A stretch of 64,000 bases of DNA from positions 124,001-188,000 of IMG/VR virus record IMGVR_UViG_3300015261_000001. The stretch is one strand, 5' to 3'. A program made the translations under genes and the position numbers. Position 1 is the stretch's first letter. Each line of letters opens with the position of its first letter. The notes under the pieces were generated by a model. It did no database searches. It was not told the DNA's origin and was given only the letters and a program-made list of their open reading frames with translations. This document shows, piece after piece, positions 22,701 through 58,191 of this stretch.

Positions 22701-25700
22701 CGGATGTTCCGATCCTCGAAGTGTTCAAACTGCGTCGTGGTGATTACTACGACATGCTCTCCAACCGCGTCATTGACAGTTGGGAAGGCATCACCGGTTC
22801 AGTGAAGGACCTCAGTAACGGTGCAGTGATCGGTGCTAAGCGTCTGTCCGGTAAACTCTTCACAGAAGACAACAAGGAAGTCTTCCTCAAAGGGCTGGAC
22901 AAGATCCGTGAGTGGGCAGTCAAAGCCTTCAAGTGGTTCGATCCGTTCGGTCGTTTGAAAGGCATGACCGACAAAGTCACCAAGCGTTTCTACCAGATGG
23001 ATGTTTACGTCGAGGGTGAAGAAGAGCCTGCGCTGTTCGGCAAGAACTTCAAAGACGGTCACTACTTCGTTAAAGATGAAACCGGGCGCTTGGTGCAAAT
23101 CAACGGCTGGAATGAAATCACGGGGGCGGTGTACGACAAGGATGGCAACACACTGATCTCTGAAGAAGATTACGATCGTGGCCTGAAGACATCCATGGGT
23201 GCTTCCATTAACAAAACTCAAAAGACTTTGGGGACGGTTAAGAAGTGGGGTGTCGATCTGTTTGGTATGTTGAAAGACAAAGCAGCTCCTCATGCCAAAG
23301 GTGCTCTTGATAAAACGAAGAAACACTTTAAGGCGGATTACACCCCTATCGTGTCTTCGATCGATCGCATCTACCACCTGCTGTTGAAGCACTGGGGGTA
23401 TGAGGAAGAAGAGAAGCCTGTGCCGTTTGCTTCACCTGAGTCGGACGTTGCTAAGCCCGACCCAAACAAACCCACAGAGGCTGCTGTTCTCTCTGAGGAG
23501 GATAAGAAGAAGGAAGAGGAGGCGTTGATTGAACGTCGTCGTCTGGCCAAACTTCGTCGTAACACAAAAGGAACTCCGCAAGACTTGGTGGACAAAGCCG
23601 ATCCGCCTAAGGATACTCCTTTTACTCCTCCTGCAAATGAATCGATACACGTATCCCCGTCTGGCTCCCCCGAAAACACTGGGGAAAACGCTAGTGGGGT
23701 GAAAAGTCCGACTAAACCATCGGATTATTCCAAACACGGTATCGAGGGCTTCGCTAAGCGTTATCCTCACATGAGTAAAATCTTTGGTTCTCAGACTGGG
23801 AAGATGGATGCCCAGCAAGAACGTGAGGAAGAAGAGAAGAAGAATACCCCACACACCAAAGCTGATGCTGGTGATGAAACTCGTGCTAACTCTGTAGCTG
23901 ATCGGGCTAATCAGAAGCAGAAGAAGAAAGACGGGTTGGTTCAAGATGCGATTATTAACATCGCTGAGAACTTTGGCTTTGGGCAGAAGAACAATGATGA
24001 ACTGGCTAAGAAGAAGTCGGTTGGTTTGTTCGGTTTGTTAGGTGGGATGTTTAGTGGTATTGCTTCGGGTATTGCTACTTTAACTTCTTTCTTTACCAGC
24101 AAGATCTTGTGGAAAGGTTTGGGCACCCTGTTTAAGTTTAGCACCATGGGCTTGAAAGTATTGCCGGCCATTGGTACTGGTATTGCTGCATTGGTTACGG
24201 GTATTACTACTCTGATCAAAACTGGTAGCTTGGGCAGTGCAGGTGCTGATGCTTTGGATGCCATGAGAGGTCGTCGTGGTCCGGGTAGCCGTCGTAATGG
24301 TCGTCGTGACCGTCCTACACCTGGTCGTCGCTTTGGTGGCGGTATGGGTAAGTTGGGTGCGGGTATGGCTATTACCGCTGGTGCTGGTTACCTGATGGAC
24401 AATGGGGTGATCGACGAAGACAGTGGTATGGGTCAAGCGTTGGAGGTGGCGGGTACTGCTGCGAGCGTCTACGGCGCTGGTCAGATGGCTGTAGGTGCGG
24501 CAGGTGCCTTGGGTGTGGATATCGGTGTAGGTACTCTTGCAGCGGGCGCTGGGACGGTTGCAGCGGGTGTTGCGGGTACAGCGATGTTCGGTGGTCTGGT
24601 TAACATGGGGATTGCAGCGGCTCCTTTGCTGATGAACCCTTATGTGTTGGCTGCTTTGGCTGTTGGTGCTGCGGGTTACGGGATCTATCGGTTCATTAAC
24701 CGGGGCGGTGGTAAGCAGATCGAGATACGGATGACGCAGTACGGTCTTTCGGATCCTGAGGGTGATCTGGCTACTAAGATCCGTCAAGCGGAAGACATGC
24801 TGAAGGATCACGTGGTGATCGGCAACGGTCGTGCTTCCTTGTCGAAGAAGGCTCCGATTGAACAGGTAGTACGACTGTTCATGACTGACCCGACAAGCAA
24901 GAAGGAACTGGGTGATGTCTTTACTTGGTTCAACGGTCGCTTTAAGCCGGTCTACATGACTTACATGGCGTGTTTGGATGTGGTGAAGATTAAGTCGTTG
25001 AAGGAGTACGACGAATCCAAGTCACAAGACGTCTACAAGGTCGCTAGCCAAGCGCACACCGGTATCAGTGGGATCATGCCACTGCCTTACGACATCGTTG
25101 CTAACATCGATCGTGAGAACCCGCTGCTGAATGCGAAGAAGACGATCATTCGGGTGAACAACCTGCTTGATGAGTTGAAGAAGTACGTAGACCGCCAGTC
25201 TGATTCATCTGAGCTTTCGCCTGCTGATGTCACTACAGGTCAGAGTAAAGAAGGGCTGGAAAAGGAACGGATGAACCTGGAAGCCAAGTTGGCTAACCCC
25301 AACACGGAATGGACCCGGGACAACACCAAATGGAATGCCATGGATCGTCTTAAAGACGTCAATGGTGAAATCGCTAAGCTGAACTCGATCTACAAGTCGG
25401 GGGAAATGGTTACGCAGATCTACATCAGTGATCTGTTGCCAGATGGCAAACCGATGGACATGCTGACTGCTATTCGGGTCGCTGCCTATGGTAACGATGA
25501 AAACATTCCGTGGCGTGTGGAGGCAGTGCTGAAGTTGGAGCGGCATTGCGAGACTCTGTTCAAAGTCACCGGGGATAAGGCAGTTTTCACTGGTGAAGTA
25601 GGTGACTTGTTCAACCGCTTCAAAGAAGCCTTCCGTGTTGACGAGAAGTATGCGGACGATTGGTGCATCTGGTTCCGTGATCGGTTCTTGCCGGTTCTGA

Positions 25701-47515: not shown

Positions 47516-47884
47516 TTATGCCGGTACTGGTGTACCGTTCAGAACATCTTCAGGGATGTTGTATTCCTTGATCAGGTAATCCAAGGCAAGCTGCAAACTG
47601 GTAAAGGTGTGCATTGCCCCGATATTGTCCCCCAGATGGAGTGCCCAGTGAGGGTGTTCCACGGTCTTTTGTTCGATAATCACCATACCCAATTGGAAAC
47701 CGGTGTTATTGACCTTGTAACCACTGCGGATAGTGACCGGGATTTCTTGAGTGCTCAGGAAAGCCAGAATCTTCTCTACCTGAGGACGCAGGGCTTCACC
47801 CTCTGCTGCCAACTTGGCGTTTACCGCAGCAATGTCAGCCTCGACATTAGAAGGTTTGATTTGACGTTGTTTATTTGGCTTCAT
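47516..47884 (-). CDS. Hypothetical protein
   Basis: 122 aa, in a tightly packed minus-strand cluster. Confidence 0.6.
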   Translation of the reverse strand: MKPNKQRQIKPSNVEADIAAVNAKLAAEGEALRPQVEKILAFLSTQEIPVTIRSGYKVNNTGFQLGMVIIEQKTVEHPHWALHLGDNIGAMHTFTSLQLALDYLIKEYNIPEDVLNGTPVPA

Positions 47885-47887
47885 TGC

Positions 47888-48487
47888 TTATCCTCTCTCG
47901 CCCTTTACACCGGTAGGTTCAATAGGGTCAATCCCCAAACGCTCTAGGTGACTGTTAATGTTACCACAGGTCACCAAATAAGAGACGTTACTGAACCCAA
48001 AGACCAACCCCACCAAACTGGTCACTTCACCCAGCCCTTCATGAGAGGCCGCCCAATACTGTCTATCATCACAGCAGACAGTGACTTCTTCATGACGTTT
48101 CATTCCGCTAGGGGTGTAAATGACTCCTTTCTCCTCAATGTTGCTAGAGGAGTTCAACGTCAGGAGGTCTTCCCAACTACCGAATACAATCACCCCATTG
48201 ATACTGGTCACCATAGGGATAGTTTTCAACTCGTTACTGACCCAGTCTAACAACTCCTGTAGATCAGCACACCCGGCATGTTCCCTGCCAAAGGATTCAC
48301 TGTCTACCGTCCAATTGGATTTAGCCAATACAGGAATGGTCTTACCCAGATACTCCATATCCTGCATATGGTGAGTGCCACGGATCTCAAATGTGATACC
48401 GACCGTGGCGGCTTGTTTCTTAAGGTTGTCAATACGGGGTTGATGATACTCCCATTGACCACTCAGTACGCTGTAAGGGCAACTCAT
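47888..48487 (-). CDS. Hypothetical protein
   Basis: 199 aa; overlaps the upstream gene by 4 nt. Confidence 0.6.
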   Translation of the reverse strand: MSCPYSVLSGQWEYHQPRIDNLKKQAATVGITFEIRGTHHMQDMEYLGKTIPVLAKSNWTVDSESFGREHAGCADLQELLDWVSNELKTIPMVTSINGVIVFGSWEDLLTLNSSSNIEEKGVIYTPSGMKRHEEVTVCCDDRQYWAASHEGLGEVTSLVGLVFGFSNVSYLVTCGNINSHLERLGIDPIEPTGVKGERG

Positions 48488-48873
48488 GGAATCACATCCC
48501 AGGCAATGTTGGTATTACCCCGACCAATACCTTGATTAGGGTCTTCTTTGACCTTCTCTACGAACGAGTCGCACAGTTCACGAGCCAACTGAGGATCCAG
48601 AGGGCGTACATGAGCACCGGGGGCTAACTCAGTCCATACGCCCTCAACGATAGCCTTGATGTTCTCAGCGATCCCCATGTGCACCTCAGCCAACATCAAT
48701 GCCTCATCCAGACTGCGAGCCATGACTTGAGGAATAGGGTCCAATCCTTGATGACCCGGGTCGAAGTACACACAGAACATGCCATACGTGTCGTTAATCG
48801 ACAGTTGCATATTCACCTTGACTTCAGCAGCCTTCACTTGGAGGGCTTTAAAGCGTTCTTCAAGAGTTGACAT
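48484..48873 (-). CDS. Hypothetical protein
   Basis: 129 aa; overlapping cluster. Confidence 0.6.
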   Translation of the reverse strand: MSTLEERFKALQVKAAEVKVNMQLSINDTYGMFCVYFDPGHQGLDPIPQVMARSLDEALMLAEVHMGIAENIKAIVEGVWTELAPGAHVRPLDPQLARELCDSFVEKVKEDPNQGIGRGNTNIAWDVIP

Positions 48874-49411
48874 TTAAGCCACCCCGTGTAAAGAGTCGTT
48901 TAATCAACAACCACAACTTACGTGGTTTACTGGTGCGGACAAAGGGAGTGCCTTTACCGGTCATTTGGAGAGCCCCTCGTCCGTGGTATTTGAATGGGTC
49001 AATTTCTACAGGTTGTGCGATCGGGTAGTTATCCTCAACCAGGAAACCCCCTGCAAACACCTTCTTCGGTTCCGCGTGATGCGGGTGACCGGTATAAGCC
49101 TTGGCATCATAACCACGCCGAGACAGTTGTTTACCCAGTTCATCGAATTGATGACTGTTAACAGCGTAGACGGTCAAATAGCAACCGGCTAATGGAATAC
49201 GGAGTTGCAACCAGTTAAAGAACGACGCTGGTTGTTTGCAGTTACCCAGTTTAATCCCCAACAGCAATAACACCTCACGATGAGCGAGACATGGGATACC
49301 GTTTACATAGCCAACCATCAGCTTACCGTAATTGGTCACCAGTCCCAGGTGAGGATCACGAACAATAAGGTCTTTAATCTTGTGTTTACGATTTGGCATT
49401 ACTTTGCTCAT
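48860..49411 (-). CDS. Hypothetical basic protein
   Basis: Likely start MSKVM at 49411 (183 aa); the longer track start lies inside the terminator region. Confidence 0.55.
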   Translation of the reverse strand: MSKVMPNRKHKIKDLIVRDPHLGLVTNYGKLMVGYVNGIPCLAHREVLLLLGIKLGNCKQPASFFNWLQLRIPLAGCYLTVYAVNSHQFDELGKQLSRRGYDAKAYTGHPHHAEPKKVFAGGFLVEDNYPIAQPVEIDPFKYHGRGALQMTGKGTPFVRTSKPRKLWLLIKRLFTRGGLNVNS

Positions 49412-49462
49412 TATGTTGGTTAACACTATAACAATGGAACACAGGCAAAAATAAAGAGTAAA

Positions 49463-49491
49463 TACCCACCTCCCCATAAGGGAGGCAGGTA
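49463..49491 (-). terminator. Terminator after the lyase gene
   Basis: TACC..CCTCCC / GGGAGG..GGTA stem followed by TTTATTTTTGCC on the minus strand. Confidence 0.6.
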
Positions 49492-49502
49492 GTCGTAATC
49501 GG

Positions 49503-50498
49503 TTATTTCAGGAGATCTCGTTGCGCCATAGACCAGTAACGGACACCACGTCCCTTGGTGGGGTCTACCGTGGCCAGAATAGCGTCCAGTTTATCGAGGT
49601 TAGCCAGTGCGGTCTTCTTAGCCCCTCGGCTAATATTGCCCTGTATCTGAACAATCAACTTATTCACCACCTCTTGCAGTTCTTCAGGGACGTCAGTAAT
49701 CAGCACCCGCTCGTGACTGTCCAGAGCAAAGGTTTCCCCTACCCGCCAATAAGTGTCAGTATCGAGGTTAATAGCATCGAGTTCGATAGCGTCCCCGTGA
49801 TAGACGTCCAACTCAAACAAGACGATCTGTCCTTGACCTTCTTGCTGTTGTTCGTACGGCATGGTGATATCAGTTTGACAGTAGACCCCGGCTTTTGCAT
49901 AGAGACCGGTATCCTGACTGTAGGAACCGTCCATATTGATCGCTGTAGCCCAGGATTTAGCGTCTGCCTGATTCCAGTTAAAGGCGGCGATGAAAGTACC
50001 CTTATCAAAACCAAACAAAAGGTCGAAGATTTGCCCGCGTTTAACCCCTCTTACCAACACGTATTCAGTTTCCTTAGCCAAGAAGGTTTTGGCCACTTGT
50101 ACGTTCAAGTAAAACGAGTCATCTACCTTGTCGTAATACCACTGACCCTTTGCCAGAGGACGGGTGGAACTACCGTGCCACTGAATACTGATGGCTTTAC
50201 CCGCAGGACCGAGGTCCATAATGGCTTGACGTACCGCAATGGCGTTGAATCCGTGCTGATCAATCTTGATGGCGGTCTTACGCCCTGTAACGGGGTCAAA
50301 TTCCCGCAATTCAGAACGCCCGTATTTAGTGTTCTGGGTGGGTTGCAAATCTTCGCCCTTAGTAGGGCTGGTAGCGATGATCCGATCTTTCTTACTGGTG
50401 TCCCAGAACGCATTATTGAGTGTAGGTAGATCCGTTACCGATGTGGTGACGTTAGTAGGGTCGGTATGGTTGAAGCAATTGATCTTGGCGAAAGGCAT
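49503..50498 (-). CDS. Polysaccharide lyase family 7 (alginate lyase 2)-like protein
   Basis: All three PL7 signature segments in order: YGRSELRE, ISIQWHG and LYAKAGVYCQ; no signal peptide; extra ~70-aa C-terminal region. Confidence 0.8.
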   Translation of the reverse strand: MPFAKINCFNHTDPTNVTTSVTDLPTLNNAFWDTSKKDRIIATSPTKGEDLQPTQNTKYGRSELREFDPVTGRKTAIKIDQHGFNAIAVRQAIMDLGPAGKAISIQWHGSSTRPLAKGQWYYDKVDDSFYLNVQVAKTFLAKETEYVLVRGVKRGQIFDLLFGFDKGTFIAAFNWNQADAKSWATAINMDGSYSQDTGLYAKAGVYCQTDITMPYEQQQEGQGQIVLFELDVYHGDAIELDAINLDTDTYWRVGETFALDSHERVLITDVPEELQEVVNKLIVQIQGNISRGAKKTALANLDKLDAILATVDPTKGRGVRYWSMAQRDLLK

Positions 50499-50574
50499 AA
50501 CGCGTAATCCTCTAAAATAAACCTCCCTTCATAGGGCGGGCATAGGATCTGATGCAAAAAATAAAGGAGTACCA

Positions 50575-50596
50575 CCTACCCCCTTACGGAGGTAGG
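50575..50596 (-). terminator. Terminator of the early gene cluster
   Basis: Minus strand CCTACCTCC-GTAA-GGGGGTAGG (U.G wobble, GNRA loop) followed by TTTATTTTTTGC. Confidence 0.75.
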
Positions 50597-50612
50597 CAGC
50601 ATTCACAAGGTG

Positions 50613-50912
50613 TTATTTACGGTTGTTACGGTAGTGACGAATGAAGTTCAGCAGATCACCGTATACCCGTCTGCTGATAGAACGCAACTTCAGTTCTTCC
50701 AGCCTAACTTCTAGGTCCACTAACTGCGCCTGGCGGATCTTCAACGCCTCAGCGTACCACTCAGCCCGTTGGGTTAACTGGATCTGCAAGGCCGATTGGA
50801 ACTCCTTGGCGTTTTCAGCTTCGGTCACCATCCACGTATGCGCCTGAGTGAGGACTTTGATGGTCTCTTTCTGGGCATCGATTTTGGCTTGTAGCCAAGA
50901 ACGGTACATCAC
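50613..50912 (-). CDS. Hypothetical coiled-coil protein
   Basis: 99 aa; heptad pattern; overlapping cluster. Confidence 0.6.
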   Translation of the reverse strand: MMYRSWLQAKIDAQKETIKVLTQAHTWMVTEAENAKEFQSALQIQLTQRAEWYAEALKIRQAQLVDLEVRLEELKLRSISRRVYGDLLNFIRHYRNNRK

Positions 50913-51097
50913 AGGTGCATCTCCGCTTCCATGGACTCGATCATGCCTTCGAACGTTTCACTCGGTTCGGAGACATCCACGTCATCAATTGCACCATGCC
51001 AATAGCCGTCGACAAAGAAGAACTCCAAGCAGACGTGGTCATCGGTGCACGCTTGTTGAATAGCCAGTACGCGGTCCTGTATCGATTTATCACTCAT
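50909..51097 (-). CDS. Small acidic hypothetical protein
   Basis: 62 aa; 4-nt overlaps on both sides. Confidence 0.55.
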   Translation of the reverse strand: MSDKSIQDRVLAIQQACTDDHVCLEFFFVDGYWHGAIDDVDVSEPSETFEGMIESMEAEMHL

Positions 51098-51609
51098 TCC
51101 TTACCCTCATCCCACCAACCGTTAACCAGCAGTACTCGCTTGATCTTCAGTTGGCTAGCCAGTTGTTTATCGTGAACCGCTACCAAGTCCTCACGGAACG
51201 GGATAGCGTCATTAATCTCTTTCTTCAACACACTCAGCAGGTAGCCCTGACGGCGATACTCGTCCATCAAGGTTACCCGTGTACGCAATAACAAGGTTTC
51301 AGGTAAGCTGGTAGGAAGGGCGGTTAACAAATCACCGCTCTCTACCGCCTTTAGTAAAGCAGGGCGAAAGTTGCGGTCAGCATATTCCACCAATGCCTTA
51401 TCCAGCCGATCAATAACCCGTTGATACCGACCCCGGGCGTATTCACCAGCAGGTGCAGGGGAACTGTAATTCAAGTCCCCCAGTGCATCCTGATAACGGT
51501 GCAGCTCGGAGGAGTAAAACGCATACTCCTCCTGAGTGCCGATAAACAACTCATCTGAGTCTTCTTGTTTCTTCTTGCGGAACTCAGCGATACTGGTTAC
51601 TGTGCCCAT
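51094..51609 (-). CDS. Hypothetical protein
   Basis: Likely start MGTVTSIAEFRKKK (171 aa). Confidence 0.6.
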   Translation of the reverse strand: MGTVTSIAEFRKKKQEDSDELFIGTQEEYAFYSSELHRYQDALGDLNYSSPAPAGEYARGRYQRVIDRLDKALVEYADRNFRPALLKAVESGDLLTALPTSLPETLLLRTRVTLMDEYRRQGYLLSVLKKEINDAIPFREDLVAVHDKQLASQLKIKRVLLVNGWWDEGKE

Positions 51610-51884
51610 GGCGTTACCTTCCTCGATAAGCAATTAGGGTGACGCTCGTAAAAGGAGGCTAATTCCTTATCAGCCTGTTCTGCCAGTTGTTTGCCTTCGC
51701 TATGCAGGTGGTCAGCGATCTGAGGATCACGGTTCTGCATGGACAAAGCCAAGATACTACCGGCTTGATCGAACTTGTGTTCAATCGCCTTCAACTCACG
51801 TGCACGGTTCAATACAGCCTGTACATTTGGAACTTCCATTTCAACTTCTCCTTGATTAACACGCAGTAAAAACTGGGAACTCAT
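51597..51884 (-). CDS. Hypothetical protein
   Basis: 95-aa helical ORF. Confidence 0.55.
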   Translation of the reverse strand: MSSQFLLRVNQGEVEMEVPNVQAVLNRARELKAIEHKFDQAGSILALSMQNRDPQIADHLHSEGKQLAEQADKELASFYERHPNCLSRKVTPWAQ

Positions 51885-51909
51885 AAAACGTACCTTTGGT
51901 GAGACTTAA

Positions 51910-52299
51910 TTACTCACAACAAGCGCGGAACACTTTCTCCCACTCTTCTTCAGTGCCCTTATAACCGTTGTTGACAGCCACCTCGTAAGGGAACTCTCGC
52001 TGCGGTTGAGGAACTCCGTCGTAGTGGTACTCAAAGAAGTAATCCGGGAGACTACCGTCAGGCAGGATATGCACTTCGGTGGTCCCCAGATAACCGATCA
52101 GACCCAATGCGCAGGTATCAGGATCAGTCTTCTTTTTCTTCTTCGGATAGAGCACCACCCCCGGCTCCAGCGTGAACTGCTTGTGGAACTCGCGGTCTTG
52201 CTGGATACGGGTATTCAAAGACTTCGTACCCCGCATCACGGTGGCTTTCAAATGCAACGCCAGACGCAGGGTTCGGCTATTTGCTTTAACGAGCGGCAT
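51910..52299 (-). CDS. Hypothetical protein with a C-terminal tail-fibre-type helical motif
   Basis: 129 aa; ends PYEVAVNNGYKGTEEEWEKV. Confidence 0.6.
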   Translation of the reverse strand: MPLVKANSRTLRLALHLKATVMRGTKSLNTRIQQDREFHKQFTLEPGVVLYPKKKKKTDPDTCALGLIGYLGTTEVHILPDGSLPDYFFEYHYDGVPQPQREFPYEVAVNNGYKGTEEEWEKVFRACCE

Positions 52300-52684
52300 A
52301 GCTTTCCTCCTGAATCAACCGATCCACTTCCGCCCAGCCTTCTTCAGGCATTCCAGAGATGGTGTAGGCTTTGTGCAGACGCGACATCAACTGCAACACG
52401 TCCTTACGTTCGAATACCGCAAACAACTGGTGGTACGACTCGTCCCGTTCTTCGCAGTCCAGATCCAGGTTAAACGACTGACCGTCTTCCATGCGTTTGA
52501 TCAGAGTCAGGTTGCTATCCTCACCTTTGACCCCTTCCACTTCCAACAGAGGCTGGTAGTAGTAGCTCTGATTACCGCCGTTCTCACCCTTGATAGCAAG
52601 AGGATCGAAGTCAGTCGGGTAGAACTTGGCAAACACTGTACCCGCTGGCAGGTACAGGAACTCTTTCAGATTAACAATCCTCAT
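52286..52684 (-). CDS. Hypothetical phage protein
   Basis: 132 aa; AGGA RBS. Confidence 0.65.
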   Translation of the reverse strand: MRIVNLKEFLYLPAGTVFAKFYPTDFDPLAIKGENGGNQSYYYQPLLEVEGVKGEDSNLTLIKRMEDGQSFNLDLDCEERDESYHQLFAVFERKDVLQLMSRLHKAYTISGMPEEGWAEVDRLIQEESYAAR

Positions 52685-52689
52685 CCTAC

Positions 52690-53028
52690 TTATCCCCTTA
52701 TTGGAATGATTTCGGCTGATTCAGGAGTAATCAGTTTCCACTCCCCCTCTACCATCAGTTCGATGGTCCAGCCTGTCTCTTTACTGGCATGGTCCCGTGC
52801 AGTCGCTAACCAGCTCTCAGCCATCAGGCGGAGGTTCTTGCGGGTCATCTCCTGCACCATGGCAACATCGCAGACAACGGTATCGCAGTTCTTGAACAGA
52901 CGGTTACTCATGTCCAAGCACGTGGCAATACGTTCCTTACGACTCTGGCCATGACGCAACCAATGCTCCAGCGCCTCAGGGGACTCAAACTCCTTCCCCC
53001 ACACATCTTTACGAATCACTGTCCCCAT
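52690..53028 (-). CDS. Hypothetical protein
   Basis: 112 aa; overlapping cluster. Confidence 0.6.
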   Translation of the reverse strand: MGTVIRKDVWGKEFESPEALEHWLRHGQSRKERIATCLDMSNRLFKNCDTVVCDVAMVQEMTRKNLRLMAESWLATARDHASKETGWTIELMVEGEWKLITPESAEIIPIRG

Positions 53029-53524
53029 TACGTTCTTTCGCCTCTTTTAACTGTTGACGGAGAGAATCAGGCGTCTTATGACCCCAGCTATCCAACACGA
53101 TAGGATTCTCAGGATTGTCTTTCAAATGAGTCCAGTACAACCGAGCACTCATGGCGCTAAAGAAGAACCGAGTCAAACGACGATCGGTGCCGTACTTGAA
53201 CACCACGTAGTAATGATCCACCGTACCGATAGGTTCATCGATCTGATAGAACAGGTAACCCGCTTCGCTAGCAATCGGACGCATACCCTCCCGACGCTTA
53301 TTGAAGTACGGCAAGAGCACTTCATCCCACCAACGACCCCGAGTCTTAATCGTGTTGCGCAGGTCGTCGGTAAACAACCGATGGAAAGGACGGATCATCC
53401 CTTCGATGCAAGGACCCAACTGATACTCGTGCAAGGTCTCCTGCATCTTCTCTTCGGTAGTGGGCAAGAAGTTACTCACCCGTACCGCCAGCAACTTACT
53501 TAAACGCTTATGTTGCTTTGCCAT
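53009..53524 (-). CDS. Paralog-family protein 1 (N-terminal KQHKRL domain plus shared C-terminal domain)
   Basis: 171 aa; YYVVFKYG...TRFFFS..SARLYWTHL...SWGHKT. Confidence 0.7.
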   Translation of the reverse strand: MAKQHKRLSKLLAVRVSNFLPTTEEKMQETLHEYQLGPCIEGMIRPFHRLFTDDLRNTIKTRGRWWDEVLLPYFNKRREGMRPIASEAGYLFYQIDEPIGTVDHYYVVFKYGTDRRLTRFFFSAMSARLYWTHLKDNPENPIVLDSWGHKTPDSLRQQLKEAKERNGDSDS

Positions 53525-54053
53525 AAATCTTCCATCCTAAGAATTTGTAAATATCGAGGGTCGAACGGAACCCATACTCAGCCGTCCCCGGTACGCCCTT
53601 ACGTTCATGTAACCACGTCAGGTGTTCGAAGTAACGGTAAGCATGATCCTTCTGAATGAAGAAGAAGGTTTTGCTCTTGTTGAATCCTGTTTCAAAGACA
53701 ACAAAGAACCCACCTACTCGGTTGAGTTTCACCACAGGTGCCACACACATCGTGCCGGGGTGTAAAACTTCCGCTGGATACAACCGACTGTCCACCGGTT
53801 CCATGGGTTGATGTTTATCAAACCAAGGGATATCCACATACTCCCACCAGCGCCCACGACGTTCCATGGAGACGCGTACCTGAGTACGAATGGCTAAGTC
53901 AGCCACCCAGTCACCGAAGTCTTCACTGATAGCATTTTTCTTAAACGCTACCAGCGCTGCTTCAATCTCTTCTACGCTTTTGTAATCCCCGCAATGAACA
54001 TCACCATGTGCCCAGTACAGAAGTCTGACTAAGCGCTTGTGTTGTTTAGGCAT
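53508..54053 (-). CDS. Paralog-family protein 2
   Basis: Likely start MPKQHKRL at 54053 (181 aa); FFVVFETG...TFFFIQ..HAYRYFEHL...EYGFRS. Confidence 0.7.
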   Translation of the reverse strand: MPKQHKRLVRLLYWAHGDVHCGDYKSVEEIEAALVAFKKNAISEDFGDWVADLAIRTQVRVSMERRGRWWEYVDIPWFDKHQPMEPVDSRLYPAEVLHPGTMCVAPVVKLNRVGGFFVVFETGFNKSKTFFFIQKDHAYRYFEHLTWLHERKGVPGTAEYGFRSTLDIYKFLGWKIYGKAT

Positions 54054-54537
54054 CACGTTTGTCCTTAGGCTGATCGTAAACAATCCCAGCGTGAGTCACA
54101 CGACCGCCCTCAGCGTGGACCTTGTCGTAGAACGCTTGCGACATGGGTGGCATCTCATCCTCGATGGTGTCAGGAACCGAAGCCATAACGATTTCTTTCA
54201 GGTCATTCTTTTTCATGCTGTTACCCTCACCGGTTAATACGTAGTTAAGTTCTTCCAACGATTTACTTCCCCACACATCAGGGTTAGCAGGCGCTGGGGT
54301 TTCACCAATCAAGTACAGGTAATAACTCTTCGCCCCACTGTTCGTGATAAAGAAGCGAGTCTTCTCTTCATCGTCTCCCTCTTGGAAAACTACGAAGTAA
54401 CGGGGGTGGTTACCCACCTTTCCTCGGATACTGGCAAACACAATCCTGTGCTCGTCTACAAGGTTCACAGGAACTGTTGCAGCGAGCATGACAGTCATCA
54501 GTTGGTTCTTGTTGAAGCGTGGCGCTACCGCGTCCAT
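54046..54537 (-). CDS. Paralog-family protein 3
   Basis: 163 aa; AGGAG RBS; YFVVFQEG...TRFFITNSGAKSYYLYL...WGSKSLEEL. Confidence 0.7.
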   Translation of the reverse strand: MDAVAPRFNKNQLMTVMLAATVPVNLVDEHRIVFASIRGKVGNHPRYFVVFQEGDDEEKTRFFITNSGAKSYYLYLIGETPAPANPDVWGSKSLEELNYVLTGEGNSMKKNDLKEIVMASVPDTIEDEMPPMSQAFYDKVHAEGGRVTHAGIVYDQPKDKRDA

Positions 54538-54654
54538 AGGGACTCCTAGCCTAGGTTAAAATAAAAGCGCATACACGCACCCCCGTCCAGACCCCCTGAT
54601 TTCATTGGGTTTCGTAGGGGTACCCTATTTTTTCGCACTAAAAACAAAGCAAAT

Positions 54655-54885
54655 CTAATTCTTCTTCATATCCACTAGAAAACGAAGTCTTTCAAACAAC
54701 TTTGGCATATCACTTCCATACACCAGATAATCTTTTCCCTGCATTGAACAGATACAATTACGCCCAATAATTGCCTCCTTACTCAATGCTTCTAACAGAT
54801 CAATTAGACCCGGTAGAGTAATGTTGTTAATCAATTCTTCTATTTCTTTTTGTTCTCTGTCTCCCATGATGCTTATTACTCCCAT
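54655..54885 (-). CDS. Hypothetical protein in AT-rich patch
   Basis: 76 aa or slightly shorter; about 34% GC in the lines I counted. Confidence 0.55.
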   Translation of the reverse strand: MGVISIMGDREQKEIEELINNITLPGLIDLLEALSKEAIIGRNCICSMQGKDYLVYGSDMPKLFERLRFLVDMKKN

Positions 54886-55205
54886 AGTTGTTTAGTTGAT
54901 TGTTTAAGTTCATCTAAAGTTTGATAACCGTAGTTGTAGGGTTCTGGTTGGTTACCCGGTGTAAGCTGTCTTAAGTACTGAATGTATCCATCTGCTGTAT
55001 GTCTATCTACAAAGAACCTAAGCGTATTACTAGGTTCGTCTTGATGATAAGCGGCATACACCATATGGTCTGCACAACCTTCTGGGTTAACCATCCCTAG
55101 AAGAATACGTTGCTGACATTTACTCCTATTGAGTGAACACTTCCACCCATAAGGAGAATACTTGTTTAAGAGTATTATCTTGTTAAGATCAAAATTAATT
55201 GTCAT
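54876..55205 (-). CDS. Paralog-family protein 4 (AT-rich copy)
   Basis: 109 aa; VYAAYHQD...TLRFFVD..TADGYIQYL...NYGYQTLDEL. Confidence 0.65.
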   Translation of the reverse strand: MTINFDLNKIILLNKYSPYGWKCSLNRSKCQQRILLGMVNPEGCADHMVYAAYHQDEPSNTLRFFVDRHTADGYIQYLRQLTPGNQPEPYNYGYQTLDELKQSTKQLWE

Positions 55206-55229
55206 AGCGGGTATTCCTCTAGGGGTTAG

Positions 55230-55565
55230 TTAGAGCGCGTGTTTGTTGCGGAAGACTAGGATCTCTTCGAGGTTACTCCACCCCCACTCATTTAGATTAG
55301 TAGGGGCGTCGCCTGCTCTGAAGTTACGCAGGTAGTTAATGTAACTACGAGCGCCTGTGTTAGTGGTGAACAGTCTAGCGGTAGCTTCGTAGTTATCGCG
55401 TACGTAGACAGCGAAGACTTTAGAGCAGGGGGTATTGCCTGGTTGCAGTTGAGCGTACGTGATCTCTTGTATCGGTTGGGTGACATCACTCACGATAGAG
55501 TACACGTTACCGAGTACGGGAGCTGCGAGTACGAGTTCCTTAAGTTGCTCTGGGGTCATGATCAT
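55230..55565 (-). CDS. Paralog-family protein 5
   Basis: 111 aa; VFAVYVRD...ARLFTTNTGARSYINYL...EWGWSNLEEI. Confidence 0.7.
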   Translation of the reverse strand: MIMTPEQLKELVLAAPVLGNVYSIVSDVTQPIQEITYAQLQPGNTPCSKVFAVYVRDNYEATARLFTTNTGARSYINYLRNFRAGDAPTNLNEWGWSNLEEILVFRNKHAL

Positions 55566-55864
55566 TCCTTTAGGCGGAGGGTGTAGTTACCGTCAGTATC
55601 TTTAACGATTACCACGCCATGTTCTTTAGCGATCTTGTCTGCATCTTCCCTGTGCTTCATGGAGTTGATGACAGATTGTTCTCTGAGTCTAACTGTGCCG
55701 AGGTGGTGAACCTCTCGCATGGCTTGCTCAGACTTAAAGAGGAGTTCTTGTATCTGGATAACAGCTTCGTAAGGGATCCTAGGACCGCCTTTGCTGGTAC
55801 GCCGCTCGCGACGTTCAGACATCTTGCGATCTCTCCAGCCTTGCATCTGTACGACTTCGCCCAC
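55562..55864 (-). CDS. Hypothetical protein
   Basis: 100 aa (GTG start, AGGAG RBS). Confidence 0.6.
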   Translation of the reverse strand: MGEVVQMQGWRDRKMSERRERRTSKGGPRIPYEAVIQIQELLFKSEQAMREVHHLGTVRLREQSVINSMKHREDADKIAKEHGVVIVKDTDGNYTLRLKE

Positions 55865-55911
55865 GGCTTACTCCTTAAGGAGCTGCCCGGTTAAGAGCAG
55901 CTCGCGTAGGT

Positions 55912-56970
55912 TTACTCTGGTTGGTTAGGTTCGTCAGGCTTATCGAAGTCCTTGAGGCTTTCTACGGCTTCTTCGGCTTGACGGACGTGACGAGGTTTGA
56001 AGCCCGTGGTGTTAACGGCGTTCTCTGCTTGAGCACGGAGTTGGTCAGGTGTTAACTTATCCAGACCATCAGCCTCTGCATAAGCAAGGACTGTTTGTTC
56101 CACCGGCAGAGGCAGGTTCAGTGGTGGTACTTCCCCGGTAGGGTTTTCACGCATGAAGTAAGCCAGCTGAGCTTTACGGTGAGCGTACTCACCTTGGAAC
56201 GGACTGTCTAACACAGGGTCAGTCTTGTCCAAACCCTTCAGATCACCCGGTGTCAGATAGCTAAGGCCCGACGCTTTGATCAGCATACTTTCAACGTTGG
56301 CTTCACTGACAACACTGGGGGTATCGAGGTCACGGTACAAACGGGCACGGCTCAGGTTACTCCCCATGCCCGGACGACCAAAGCGACCACCACCGAGTAC
56401 AACGATATCATTCAGCGAACCGTCAGGGTTACGAGGTGCATCAGGATCAATGCTTACCTCTACACCCGGCTCACCCCTTGACCGTTTCCAATTTTCCATC
56501 TCTTCTACAGTCAGACGCTTCATTGCAGGGTTTGGTATCTCCCCATCAAGTTCAACGCCTGTCTTGCCAGCACCAACCTTCAGCCGACCGACGAACTGTT
56601 GGTTCTGCGGCTCATCAGCCGCGTTGTCAGCCTTGGCTTGGATCAGTGTGGTCATGTGGTCGCCAATGCTCACACGAGCTTCACCAGGCTTACGCAGTGG
56701 GTAAACACCGCCCAGCGCATGAAACGTGATGAACGCAGCCTCAGCGTCTGCGCCGTGCATCATTTCAACTACTTGCGGATACTTCTTGATGAAGTGACGA
56801 TTTTGGTAGCAGAAGTCCAACGTGTTAGCAATTTCTGCCAGCTTACTCACGTCACCTTGCATGTTGCGCCAGCACTCCACGAAACCTTCTACCGCTTCAT
56901 CGGTATGCTTGTGACCTTTGAAGTGGAATTGGTTGAGGAGTTTGGCAATACGGAGATGTTTCTTACGCAT
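55912..56970 (-). CDS. Hypothetical multi-segment protein
   Basis: 352 aa; the N-terminus MRKKHLRIAKLL resembles paralogs 1 and 2. Confidence 0.65.
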   Translation of the reverse strand: MRKKHLRIAKLLNQFHFKGHKHTDEAVEGFVECWRNMQGDVSKLAEIANTLDFCYQNRHFIKKYPQVVEMMHGADAEAAFITFHALGGVYPLRKPGEARVSIGDHMTTLIQAKADNAADEPQNQQFVGRLKVGAGKTGVELDGEIPNPAMKRLTVEEMENWKRSRGEPGVEVSIDPDAPRNPDGSLNDIVVLGGGRFGRPGMGSNLSRARLYRDLDTPSVVSEANVESMLIKASGLSYLTPGDLKGLDKTDPVLDSPFQGEYAHRKAQLAYFMRENPTGEVPPLNLPLPVEQTVLAYAEADGLDKLTPDQLRAQAENAVNTTGFKPRHVRQAEEAVESLKDFDKPDEPNQPE

Positions 56971-56982
56971 GACGAGTACCTT

Positions 56983-57300
56983 TTAAACTTGAATGAGAAT
57001 GCTGGAGAGATAAACGTCGTCGATAAAAGCAACTACCAAGCGCTGACTCTGCTTCAACTCTTGGTAGGCTTTCAGGACGTCCGAAGGATTAACCACAAAC
57101 AAATGAGCAGTGTCATCTGCACAGGGTACTTCCAAACAGAAGCCACGCACAAATTCATCTACTGGTTCATCTTTGAGGATGCACTCAGTACCGAATTTGT
57201 ACTCAACCATCCATTCACGGCCGATCAGCTTAATACCGCTGTCAAGCGTGAATACGACGCTATCGTTGTCATCACTGGGGGTTGGGAAGGGAGTACTCAT
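56983..57300 (-). CDS. Hypothetical protein
   Basis: 105 aa; overlapping cluster. Confidence 0.6.
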   Translation of the reverse strand: MSTPFPTPSDDNDSVVFTLDSGIKLIGREWMVEYKFGTECILKDEPVDEFVRGFCLEVPCADDTAHLFVVNPSDVLKAYQELKQSQRLVVAFIDDVYLSSILIQV

Positions 57301-57953
57301 ATCAGCCTCCTAGCGCCAACCCAGACGCTCTTGTACAGAGGATTAGGCTCACGCAGTGTCTTAACCACCTGAAACATGTCTTTCTCATCAAAGAGGAAGA
57401 TAAATGTCTCTACTGCGATGAAGATGTCGCCATCCGGTGCAGGTGCGAACACCGGCGTTCCATGATGATCCACCCACTTCATTTTGATATCAGGGCAGAA
57501 GCACAACGCGTACTCTTTCGAGAACGTAGCGATCTCCTGCTTGATCTGATAATCCCATCCCAAGGACAAAGCGTACAGCTCGTCCATCAGACACGTTATT
57601 CCCCCCACAGTAATCAATACCAAATTACCGTAGTTCTGCTCAATACCGCTGCGATCCTTCTGCACCACTCGGCGCGCCAGATCAGCAGCAGTAGGTTTGT
57701 ACCAATCGATCGGCTCGTCGACCGGCAGGTCTGGAACCAACTGGAGACTACGCAATTGCTCCAGACCTTCACCGATCATACCGCTTTGGTCACCGTGCAT
57801 CGAAACATGATGCTCAGTTTCCGTGATAACCTTCCGAAGACTTTCAGTCATATCGAAAGGCTTTTGGTTCAACGCTTTGGCTGCGGAAGGATTCTCCATA
57901 GCCGCATCGTAAAGACCCCCTAGTCCTTCGATCCCCTCGTTCTTATCAACCAT
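57297..57953 (-). CDS. Hypothetical protein
   Basis: 218 aa; overlaps both neighbours. Confidence 0.65.
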   Translation of the reverse strand: MVDKNEGIEGLGGLYDAAMENPSAAKALNQKPFDMTESLRKVITETEHHVSMHGDQSGMIGEGLEQLRSLQLVPDLPVDEPIDWYKPTAADLARRVVQKDRSGIEQNYGNLVLITVGGITCLMDELYALSLGWDYQIKQEIATFSKEYALCFCPDIKMKWVDHHGTPVFAPAPDGDIFIAVETFIFLFDEKDMFQVVKTLREPNPLYKSVWVGARRLI

Positions 57954-58191
57954 GTCTTACCACCCCTTGTTTGTTTTCGTTGGGTTCATATTGCAGTTTG
58001 TCGAGACGAGCTTGCATTAGTGCCGCTTTGTTACGAGTTTCCCGGCTCTTATCCCTCAGATAGCGACGCTCCCGAGTGCAAGTAGAAGCGCCCGCCATAC
58101 GGGAGAGCTTAGCTGCTTCTCGGGTAAGAGACGTGATCCGGGAACTCAACATCTTGACGAGTTCTTCTACCTTAGTCATCTGATTCACCAT
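57946..58191 (-). CDS. Small basic coiled-coil protein, first gene of the early cluster
   Basis: 81 aa, Arg/Lys-rich; starts 28 nt after the promoter motif. Confidence 0.55.
   Translation of the reverse strand: MVNQMTKVEELVKMLSSRITSLTREAAKLSRMAGASTCTRERRYLRDKSRETRNKAALMQARLDKLQYEPNENKQGVVRHG

What the first reader, a model, noticed from the sequence alone, without database searches (positions are those of the whole stretch)
49503..50498. Stand-alone PL7 alginate-lyase-like gene with an unusual QWH centre and no signal peptide
Seen: RSELRE, QWH and YAKAGVYCQ in the order of the PL7 motifs, the gene bracketed by terminators (50575 and 49463), and an extra helical C-terminal ~70 aa. Established: PL7 lyases cleave alginate; QIH versus QVH correlates with polyG versus polyM preference, and YFKAG is canonical. 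Phage depolymerases are usually beta-helical tailspikes, not PL7 jelly rolls. Inference: a lysis-released or virion-bound enzyme against Pseudomonas alginate/biofilm or another polyuronide, possibly with altered specificity. It also points to a Pseudomonas-type host.
Basis: partly seen in the sequence, partly recalled or inferred. Interest (0 to 1): 0.68.

Follow-up and report, generated by a model that had tools for sequence, protein, structure and literature searches.

The report
Jumbo-phage PL7 alginate-lyase-like enzyme
An uncultivated giant phage from plant-root soil, probably infecting Pseudomonas, carries a small, well-conserved gene for a slime-cutting (alginate-lyase-type) enzyme. It has an extra three-helix tail and belongs to a rare phage-borne kind that usual depolymerase screens would miss.

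Summary
Window 49503-50498 (-) encodes a 331-aa protein with RSELRE, QWH and YAKAGVYCQ in PL7 order. It has no hydrophobic N-terminus, and strong terminator hairpins lie on both sides.

- **Family:** Pfam Alginate_lyase2 scores 59 bits (cut-off 29.7).
- **Fold:** a confident AlphaFold2 model (pLDDT 93.9) is a beta-sandwich plus a C-terminal three-helix domain. Its best structural matches are the PL7 alginate lyases PA1167 of P. aeruginosa and A1-II'.
- **Active site:** ten PL7 signature residues, including Arg61/Arg65, Gln106, His108 and Tyr200, are invariant in 29 relatives.
- **Selection:** dN/dS against a 90%-identical ortholog is 0.05 in both domains.
- **Genome:** a 238-kb phiKZ-type jumbo phage with its own RNA polymerases, from rhizosphere metagenomes. 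Its closest cultured relatives are Pseudomonas phage EL and its kin.
- **Rarity:** the family is tiny (30 representatives among 1.84 billion proteins) and largely phage-borne.
- **QWH:** it recurs in 11 of the 29 relatives. The Trp should face the sandwich core, so it predicts no specificity.

Most likely this is an active alginate-type lyase that reaches host exopolysaccharide after lysis, or possibly on the virion. Activity, substrate and delivery route are untested. It is a new variant of a known kind, of moderate interest.

The parts
49503..50498 (-). Complete gene for a 331-aa, 37.1-kDa two-domain protein (P0001), stop codon included
   Evidence: ORF and translation. N-terminus conserved from Met1 in 6 orthologs. 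dN/dS 0.051 against the L021 ortholog.
49803..50462 (-). PL7 (Alginate_lyase2) catalytic beta-jelly-roll, residues 13-232 by Pfam; the fold spans about residues 4-237
   Evidence: Pfam 59.3 bits. AF2 pLDDT 93.9. Foldseek 1vav E 1.8e-15 with TM 0.85, and 2cws TM 0.83. Atlas cluster TM 0.90, rmsd 1.7 A over residues 4-237.
50301..50318 (-). RSELRE motif (R61, E63 and R65 invariant)
   Evidence: Invariant in 29 relatives. Aligns to YPRSELREM of A1-II'.
50175..50183 (-). QWH motif (Q106 and H108 invariant; W107 is the variable middle residue)
   Evidence: Aligns to QIH of A1-II'.
49875..49901 (-). YAKAGVYCQ motif (Y200, K202, G204, Y206 and Q208 invariant); Y200 is the presumed catalytic Tyr
   Evidence: Aligns to YFKAGNYVQ of A1-II'.
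49707..49793 (-). Inter-domain linker, residues 236-264. Orthologs carry a Pro/Thr-rich insertion of up to about 60 residues after residue 264.
   Evidence: Alignment A1.
49506..49706 (-). C-terminal three-helix module (residues 265-331; helices 272-290, 294-308, 317-330), pI 9.2, no known family
   Evidence: AF2 model. Conserved in 8 orthologs, and present as a stand-alone 119-aa gene (P0016) at the syntenic site of a related phage contig. dN/dS 0.055. No Pfam, PDB or Atlas match.
50570..50601 (-). Upstream intrinsic-terminator-like hairpin (14 pairs plus T-run) that ends the preceding gene and insulates this one
   Evidence: Conserved in the L021 ortholog locus.
50540..50549 (-). GATCCTATGC, a conserved element 42-51 nt before the start codon. 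It is a candidate phiKZ-type TATG (late, non-virion RNA polymerase) promoter, at low confidence.
   Evidence: Conserved as GATSYTATGY in 4 of 5 orthologous upstream regions and in L021. The phiKZ late promoter is T(-3)ATG(+1) (PMC7598289). Against: it occurs once in the window, and TATG is only 1.35-fold enriched upstream of genes.
50508..50513 (-). AGAGGA ribosome-binding site, 9 nt before the ATG
   Evidence: Sequence. AGAGG is conserved in orthologous loci.
49463..49491 (-). Downstream intrinsic-terminator-like hairpin (13 pairs plus T-run), starting 12 nt after the stop codon
   Evidence: Conserved in L021.

Best explanation
The gene encodes a catalytically competent polysaccharide lyase of family PL7, of the PA1167 / A1-II' alginate-lyase type, fused through a short linker to a small phage-specific three-helix module. 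It is an accessory gene of an EL-like, phiKZ-type jumbo phage from the rhizosphere whose host is probably a Pseudomonas.

Mechanism. The protein is made in the cytoplasm from its own terminator-insulated transcription unit and has no secretion signal. It can therefore meet a polyuronate only outside the cell. I consider release as a soluble enzyme at lysis the most likely route. Once outside, it cleaves the host's alginate-type exopolysaccharide by beta-elimination. Tyr200 abstracts H-5 and protonates the leaving oxygen. His108 and Gln106 hold the +1 sugar. Arg65/Arg61 neutralise the carboxylate and lower the Tyr pKa. Cleavage thins the matrix so that progeny can diffuse and adsorb. The C-terminal module is a separate binding or docking unit whose partner is unknown.

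Shown: family, fold, conserved site, two-domain architecture, purifying selection, phage context, insulation. Inferred: activity, alginate as substrate, host genus, timing and route of delivery.
For: Family and fold: Pfam PF08787 at 59 bits. AF2 pLDDT 93.9, pTM 0.85. The top Foldseek hits are all PL7 alginate lyases, led by 1vav PA1167 (E 1.8e-15, TM 0.85) and 2cws A1-II'. The best Atlas cluster is a 223-aa single-domain alginate lyase of Pseudomonadota (TM 0.90, rmsd 1.7 A).

Active site: R61, E63, R65, Q106, H108, Y200, K202, G204, Y206 and Q208 are invariant in 29 relatives that otherwise share 18% mean column identity. They align to the RSELRE / QIH / YFKAG motifs of A1-II'. His108 is kept, unlike the PL7 glucuronan lyase 7nde, which has no His in that stretch.

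Selection: dN/dS is 0.049 in the N-domain and 0.055 in the C-domain at dS 1.1.

No export signal.

Insulated unit: two conserved terminators.

Phage and host: split multisubunit RNA polymerase genes, with beta 73% identical to the EL group. The tail fibre's best hits are all Pseudomonas phages. The source is rhizosphere. A homolog is present in P. syringae phage Nican01.

Lysis link in a distant relative: in L020 the PL7 gene lies between the endolysin and lipase genes.

Location: the gene lies outside the tail module, in a block of small genes headed by an EL-type early promoter.
Against: No enzyme assay, and no RNA or proteome data; no RNA run holds the sequence. Identity to any characterised PL7 is only 20-23%, so the substrate cannot be read from sequence. 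The host is inferred, not shown; Erwinia phages RisingSun and Joad are also relatives at 61%. A conserved, autonomously occurring C-terminal module is not needed for a merely soluble enzyme and hints at docking to something. The candidate TATG promoter is weak evidence.
Confidence: 0.6

Rival explanations
1. Virion-bound depolymerase. The same active PL7 lyase is carried on the particle (tail fibres, baseplate or capsid surface), docked through the C-terminal three-helix module, and clears alginate at the start of infection.
For: The C-terminal module is conserved under purifying selection (dN/dS 0.055). In orthologs it is joined by a flexible Pro/Thr-rich tether. It also survives as a stand-alone 119-aa gene with the same upstream element at the syntenic site of a related phage, as expected of a docking unit that can lose its cargo. 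A TATG element like phiKZ late promoters lies upstream. The block lies within about 8.5 kb of the tail-fibre gene.
Against: The gene is not in a structural module and its neighbours are small ORFans. No partner was identified. The homo-oligomer test of the module gave no verdict. EL and RisingSun, which have the same virion plan, lack the gene. There is no virion proteome.
Confidence: 0.27
2. An active PL7-fold lyase whose substrate is another uronic-acid polymer rather than alginate (glucuronan, or a glucuronate/galacturonate-containing capsule or EPS), possibly in a non-Pseudomonas rhizosphere host.
For: The best single-sequence PDB hit is the PL7 beta-glucuronan lyase 7nde (E 0.0015). Identity to alginate lyases is only 20-23%. 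The clade has its own motif variants (NHTDP, QWHGSSTRPL, YAKAGVYCQ). Erwinia jumbo phages are also relatives.
Against: With the family profile, the alginate lyase A1-II' outranks 7nde. By fold, PA1167 and A1-II' are ranks 1-7 and 7nde is rank 9. The His of the alginate-type site is invariant here, whereas 7nde has no His in that stretch and PL7 glucuronan lyases are reported to use Tyr/Tyr (Vuillemin et al. 2024, title as cited in PMC11920209).
Confidence: 0.2
3. A non-extracellular or non-catalytic role: a cytoplasmic function during infection (acting on an intracellular uronate substrate or on host alginate biosynthesis), or a lectin-like binding protein that has kept the fold.
For: No signal peptide. 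The gene sits in an early-type accessory block headed by an EL-like early promoter. The nearest structural relatives, PA1167 and A1-II', also lack signal peptides and are cytoplasmic (own knowledge).
Against: All ten catalytic and substrate-binding signature residues are invariant over deep divergence, which argues for catalysis. Alginate polymer is formed at and beyond the inner membrane (established knowledge), so a cytoplasmic enzyme has no polymer substrate before lysis.
Confidence: 0.07

Closest known systems
PA1167 of Pseudomonas aeruginosa (PDB 1vav) and A1-II' of Sphingomonas sp. A1 (PDB 2cws): single-domain PL7 alginate lyases
   Same: Same beta-jelly-roll fold (TM 0.85 and 0.83 by target, rmsd 2.3-3.0 A). 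Same RSELRE / QxH / YxKAGxYxQ signature, aligned column for column. No N-terminal signal peptide.
   Different: Only 21-23% identity. Trp instead of Ile in QxH, Ala instead of Phe in YFKAG, and NHTDP instead of the usual W-x-L-T-x-P N-terminal strand. An added 67-residue three-helix module. Encoded by a phage rather than a bacterial chromosome.
Nican01_00117 (XAI70130.1) of Pseudomonas syringae phage Nican01, annotated as a hypothetical protein
   Same: The only homolog in 50,697 cultured-phage records. PL7 domain without a signal peptide, followed by a Pro-rich linker and a C-terminal helical module. Soil/plant Pseudomonas setting.
   Different: 27% identity. QIH and YFKIG rather than QWH and YAKAG. 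A 112-kb non-jumbo phage. Homology of the C-terminal modules is inconclusive (hhalign probability 24%, E 8e-4). It is uncharacterised, and the paper describing the phage does not mention it.
Classical phage capsule/EPS depolymerases (trimeric beta-helix tailspikes)
   Same: The presumed job: cutting the host's exopolysaccharide for the phage's benefit.
   Different: 331 aa rather than more than 500. Jelly-roll rather than beta-helix. No N-terminal virion anchor, and the gene lies outside the tail module. Standard screens that demand more than 500 aa, a tail annotation and a beta-helix (PMC13385381) would not find it.
Trichoderma parareesei PL7A beta-glucuronan lyase (PDB 7nde)
   Same: PL7 fold (Foldseek E 9.8e-13, rank 9). 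Best single-sequence PDB hit (E 0.0015).
   Different: It has no His at the QxH position and is reported to use Tyr/Tyr catalysis; the phage protein keeps the His. It is a fungal secreted enzyme.

Membership tests
Polysaccharide lyase family 7 (Pfam PF08787 Alginate_lyase2) | Sequence match to the family model above the curated threshold | tested here: met
   59.3 bits against a cut-off of 29.7, E 6.3e-16, covering 214 of 225 profile positions. All 29 relatives also match.
Polysaccharide lyase family 7 (Pfam PF08787 Alginate_lyase2) | Beta-jelly-roll (beta-sandwich) fold with a cleft | tested here: met
   AF2 pLDDT 93.9. The top 42 Foldseek PDB hits are PL7 lyases, the best at TM 0.85. Atlas TM 0.90.
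Polysaccharide lyase family 7 (Pfam PF08787 Alginate_lyase2) | Conserved R(S/T)E(L/V)R, Q(I/V)H and YFKAG(V/N)Y(N/P)Q blocks with the catalytic Arg, Gln, His and Tyr | tested here: met
   R61, E63, R65, Q106, H108, Y200, K202, G204, Y206 and Q208 are invariant and align to A1-II'. The non-catalytic middle residues differ (W107, A201, C207).
Polysaccharide lyase family 7 (Pfam PF08787 Alginate_lyase2) | Beta-eliminative cleavage of a polyuronate (alginate or glucuronan) | not testable with these tools
   Needs an A235 assay on defined substrates.
Polysaccharide lyase family 7 (Pfam PF08787 Alginate_lyase2) | CAZy/dbCAN subfamily assignment | not tested
   No dbCAN library or named subfamily reference sequences were on hand. 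The nearest solved members are PA1167 and A1-II'.
Virion-associated phage depolymerase (tailspike / tail-fibre type) | Beta-helix trimer with an N-terminal anchor, encoded in the tail module | tested here: not met
   Jelly-roll fold. 331 aa. Neighbours are small ORFans in an early-type block. The homo-trimer test of the C-terminal module gave no verdict.
Virion-associated phage depolymerase (tailspike / tail-fibre type) | Presence in purified virions | not testable with these tools
   Uncultivated phage, and no proteome.
phiKZ-type (EL-like) jumbo phage, as genomic context | Split multisubunit virion and non-virion RNA polymerase genes, a genome over 200 kb, and an AT-rich early promoter motif | tested here: met
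   RNAP beta-subunit PHROGs at 13771-18108 and 18114-19730. 238,193 bp with direct terminal repeats. 73% identity to the EL RNAP beta subunit. CTATATTAC occurs 11 times, each 17-82 nt before a gene except one at 650 nt, and resembles EL's annotated promoter.

The most novel reading that the evidence does not exclude
The 67-residue C-terminal three-helix unit is a portable docking module by which a group of Pseudomonas-type phages loads a small jelly-roll lyase onto the virion or onto a host envelope component. It can exist without cargo, as in the stand-alone P0016 gene. These phages would then represent an undescribed, non-tailspike class of phage depolymerase that current screens systematically overlook.
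Probability: 0.22. Interest if true: 0.6.

Novelty: new variant of a known kind. Interest (0 to 1): 0.45.

Why it matters
Sequence-defined phage alginate lyases are rare. Only one of 50,697 cultured-phage genomes holds a homolog, and that one is unannotated.

If active on acetylated Pseudomonas alginate, this 37-kDa signal-less enzyme (oligomeric state untested) would be an easily expressed candidate for biofilm dispersal. It would also be a marker of how rhizosphere jumbo phages cope with mucoid hosts.

It shows that phages carry small jelly-roll lyases outside their tail modules. Depolymerase screens that require more than 500 residues, a tail annotation and a beta-helix cannot see them.

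The conserved, separable C-terminal module is a concrete handle for asking how a non-tailspike enzyme is delivered.

The finding does not change what is known about PL7 chemistry.

Tried and rejected
- **PHROGs and NCBIfam:** no family for the protein.
- **Megablast of the 4-kb region against phages:** no match.
- **First AF2 run with 7 sequences:** pLDDT 57, unusable. It was replaced by the 29-sequence run.
- **Word-index protein search with the alignment:** added nothing beyond 6 orthologs.
- **The search for related loci with the 29-sequence alignment:** With the 7-sequence alignment it found no relative in 185,579 species genomes, though the patterns used were clade-specific.
- **C-terminal module:** nothing usable in Pfam, PDB profile search or the Atlas, only generic helical bundles. 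The link between the C-terminal modules of the two phage clades stayed inconclusive (hhalign probability 24%).
- **Complex prediction on three copies of residues 262-331:** score 0.00, controls not run, no verdict. This is not evidence either way.
- **Polyanion-binding idea for the basic C-domain (pI 9.2):** 8 of 9 close homologs are basic, but the wider family is not, so it was dropped as unsupported.
- **Extended GATSYTATGY as a genome-wide promoter consensus:** rejected. It occurs once in the window, and TATG is only 1.35-fold enriched upstream of genes.
- **Second TATG at 50529-50532:** not conserved in L021.
- **Opposite-strand ORF 49521..50429 (+):** rejected as a shadow ORF, because the Pfam match and the selection signal are in the minus frame.
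- **Neighbouring genes:** no PHROG hit and no Pfam hit above the curated cut-off for the ten genes flanking the PL7 gene on its strand.
- **Rfam on 47-59 kb:** nothing. **tRNAs in the window:** none.
- **Read laying:** not used, because all holders are DNA contigs of possible source samples.
Full report
**1. The observation.** The window holds an ORF at 49503..50498 on the minus strand, encoding 331 aa (P0001).
- Pfam-A gives one hit, PF08787 Alginate_lyase2: E 6.3e-16, 59.3 bits against a gathering score of 29.7, covering residues 13-232 and 214 of 225 profile positions. The resemblance is therefore not chance.
- The start codon is sound. An AGAGGA site lies 9 nt upstream, and the N-terminus is conserved from Met1 in all orthologs.
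- Terminator-like hairpins of 14 and 13 pairs, each followed by a T-run, lie on the gene's own strand at 50601-50570 and 49491-49463. In the whole 47.5-58.2 kb minus-strand gene block only one other hairpin of that strength exists, at the block's end.
- There is no hydrophobic N-terminal stretch. The highest 11-residue Kyte-Doolittle mean in the first 60 residues is 0.66, and the lyase domain starts almost at residue 1.

**2. Fold and active site.** A first AlphaFold2 run with 7 sequences was poor (pLDDT 57).
- After an exhaustive profile search I aligned 29 relatives (A2). The second model has mean pLDDT 93.9 and pTM 0.85. It shows a beta-sandwich from about residue 9 to 235, a linker, and three helices at 272-290, 294-308 and 317-330.
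- Foldseek against the PDB returns PL7 lyases down to rank 42. The best is PA1167 of Pseudomonas aeruginosa (1vav; E 1.8e-15, TM 0.85 by target, 23% identity), followed by alginate lyase A1-II' (2cws; TM 0.83). The PL7 glucuronan lyase 7nde is rank 9.
- The nearest ESM Atlas cluster is a 223-residue single-domain alginate lyase family of Pseudomonadota (TM 0.90, rmsd 1.7 A over residues 4-237).
- In the 29-sequence alignment the mean column identity is 18%, yet R61, E63, R65, Q106, H108, Y200, K202, G204, Y206 and Q208 are invariant.
- A profile-to-PDB alignment places these residues on YPRSELREM, QIH and YFKAGNYVQ of A1-II'. These are the blocks held to be needed for substrate recognition and catalysis in PL7 (PMC6165035; mechanism in PMC11920209).
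- His108 is kept. The PL7 glucuronan lyase 7nde has no His in that stretch, and its class is reported to use a Tyr/Tyr mechanism (reference 23 of PMC11920209). The site is thus of the alginate-lyase type.

**3. The QWH centre.** It is real, but it is not an oddity of this gene.
- Among the 29 relatives the middle residue is I in 12, W in 11, F in 4, V in 1 and C in 1.
- Residues 101-108 form a beta-strand in the model. Gln106 and His108 therefore share one face and Trp107 points to the other, towards the sandwich core. This is an inference; I could not read coordinates.
- The QIH/QVH rule for G versus M preference has several published exceptions (PMC6165035).
- I therefore see no basis for predicting specificity from QWH.

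**4. Is the gene functional?** Against the 90%-identical ortholog on contig L021, dN/dS is 0.051 at dS 1.14. It is 0.049 for the lyase domain and 0.055 for the C-terminal part. Both domains are under strong purifying selection. The two terminators, the ribosome-binding site and a GATCCTATGC element upstream are conserved between the two loci although synonymous sites are near saturation.

**5. The genome.** The window is bases 124001-188000 of a 238,193-bp virus record with direct terminal repeats.
- It encodes split multisubunit RNA polymerase beta subunits, a 2782-aa virion protein with a lysozyme-like segment, a 950-aa helicase and a 1268-aa tail fibre. This makes it a phiKZ-type jumbo phage.
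- Its RNA polymerase beta subunit is 73% identical to that of Pseudomonas phage EL and its kin, and 61% to Erwinia phages RisingSun and Joad.
- The fifteen best tail-fibre matches are all Pseudomonas phages, of both P. aeruginosa and P. syringae.
- The DNA is found only in rhizosphere metagenomes, and no RNA run holds it.
- A Pseudomonas host is therefore likely on evidence independent of the lyase, but it is not shown.

**6. Place in the genome.** A motif CTATATTAC occurs 11 times in the genome, always on the minus strand. Ten copies lie 17-82 nt before a gene start; one lies 650 nt upstream.
- It resembles the early-promoter type of phiKZ-like phages (PMC7598289) and the promoter annotated in EL at the head of its gp159-164 block.
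- One copy, at window 58226, heads the minus-strand block 58.2-47.5 kb that contains the lyase gene.
- The block lies between the tail-fibre and helicase genes, as in EL. It is 10.7 kb long here against 2.4 kb in EL, and EL lacks the lyase.
- The ten genes flanking the lyase gene on its strand have no PHROG hit and no Pfam hit above the curated cut-off.
- The lyase gene is thus an accessory gene in an expanded early-type block, but it is insulated from it by a strong terminator.
- The conserved upstream element contains TATG, the only conserved feature of phiKZ late promoters (PMC7598289). It is present in 4 of 5 orthologous upstream regions.
- The extended motif is unique in the window, and TATG is barely enriched upstream of genes. 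The timing of expression therefore stays open.

**7. Relatives.** The family is very small.
- The word-index search of 5.8 billion proteins found 6 orthologs at 44-90% identity.
- The exhaustive profile search of 1.84 billion representatives found 30 proteins at E <= 0.001 and 3 at E <= 1e-30.
- The orthologs sit on jumbo-phage contigs of 108-269 kb. On the 140-kb and 220-kb contigs the gene occupies the same block near the helicase; on the 269-kb contig its neighbours differ.
- They share the architecture of lyase domain, linker and C-terminal module. In several of them the linker carries a Pro/Thr-rich insertion of up to about 60 residues.
- A second clade at 22-27% identity has the same plan, again without a signal peptide. 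It includes Nican01_00117 of the cultured P. syringae phage Nican01, the only hit among 50,697 phage records. That protein is annotated as hypothetical and is not discussed by the authors.
- Other distant relatives lie next to an Acb1 gene, in the replication region of a 46-kb phage, or between the endolysin and lipase genes of a high-GC phage. One is bacterial with RTX repeats.
- In the viral structure library BFVD only giant-virus alginate lyases come close.

**8. The C-terminal module.** Residues 265-331 form three helices with pLDDT about 90 and a pI of 9.2.
- No Pfam, PDB or Atlas relative was found.
- In a related jumbo-phage contig (L008, seen in two samples) the syntenic gene encodes only a Pro-rich stretch plus this module (P0016, 119 aa). 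It keeps the same upstream element. The module can therefore stand alone.
- Homology to the C-terminal helical repeats of the second clade is suggestive but inconclusive (hhalign probability 24%, E 8e-4, colinear over 57 columns).
- A homo-trimer test gave no verdict.
- I read the module as a binding or docking unit with an unknown partner. That is inference.

**9. Mechanism.**
- Shown: a PL7 fold with a complete alginate-type site, two domains, no export signal, an insulated transcription unit, and purifying selection.
- Inferred: the enzyme is made in the cytoplasm and meets its substrate only outside the cell. Polyuronate exopolysaccharides such as alginate are polymerised at and beyond the inner membrane (established knowledge).
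- I favour release at lysis as a soluble enzyme, about 0.45 of the total. The gene lies outside the structural modules, a distant relative lies in a lysis cassette, and close virion-plan relatives do without it.
- Virion attachment through the C-terminal module is the main rival, about 0.27. It is supported by the autonomy of that module and the flexible tether.
- A substrate other than alginate remains possible, about 0.2. These figures answer different questions (route and substrate) and overlap, so they do not sum to one.

**10. Novelty.** The catalytic domain is a divergent new member of PL7.
- The new elements are the combination with a conserved, separable three-helix module, the restriction to a handful of phages, and the position in a jumbo phage's accessory block.
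- Published depolymerase screens ask for more than 500 residues, a tail annotation and a beta-helix (PMC13385381), so this kind of gene is invisible to them.
- I rate it a new variant of a known kind, interest 0.45.

**11. Limits.** There were no coordinates for measuring the cleft, no dbCAN subfamily call, no expression or proteome data, and no host proof.

Noticed in passing
window 3252, 32762 and 58226 (all - strand); 11 copies in the 238-kb genome: The motif (A/G)(A/C)CTATATTAC(Y) occurs 11 times, always on the minus strand. Ten copies lie 17-82 nt before a gene start; the copy at window 3252 lies 650 nt from the nearest crudely called gene. It resembles phiKZ-type early promoters and EL's annotated promoter AAACCTACATAATC.
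   Followed up: partly
L008:8001-8360 (also L009:2275-2634): In a related jumbo-phage contig the syntenic gene (P0016, 119 aa) encodes only a Pro-rich stretch plus the C-terminal three-helix module. The lyase domain is absent, and the upstream GGATGTTATGC element is kept.
   Followed up: partly
L020:6175-10928: In a high-GC 32-kb viral contig a 420-aa PL7 relative lies between an endolysin gene and a lipase (LysB-like) gene, that is, inside a lysis cassette.
   Followed up: no
L007:185-1799: A 326-aa relative (P0009) is directly followed by an Acb1 (anti-CBASS nuclease family) gene on a short phage-like contig.
   Followed up: no
window 47516-58191 (-) compared with EL 164075-166465 (L022): The early-type accessory block between the tail-fibre and helicase genes is 10.7 kb with about 20 small ORFan genes here. 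In Pseudomonas phage EL it is 2.4 kb with 6 genes.
   Followed up: partly
window 49400-49502 and 50499-50625, compared with L021: The intergenic flanks (both terminators, the TATG element, the RBS, and the next gene's upstream TTGTTATAGTGT) are much better conserved than synonymous sites of the gene (dS 1.14). This suggests functional regulatory DNA.
   Followed up: partly
window 4747-6084 (-): A 445-aa gene matches the PHROG for glutathionylspermidine synthase (E 8e-102), an auxiliary metabolic gene.
   Followed up: no
window 19760-28108 (+): A 2782-aa virion protein (tail-fibre PHROG over its whole length) carries an endolysin/lysozyme-like segment at residues 2183-2390.
   Followed up: no
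P0018 (415 aa, metagenomic protein): A relative with QFH and no signal peptide carries RTX nonapeptide repeats and a serralysin-type C-terminal domain. It is therefore probably a bacterial type-I-secreted PL7 enzyme.
   Followed up: no
genome-wide intergenic regions: Terminator arms share a recurrent GGGTAGG / CCTACCC core, 14-17-fold enriched in intergenic DNA. This includes the hairpins flanking the lyase gene and the one at 47505-47473.
   Followed up: no
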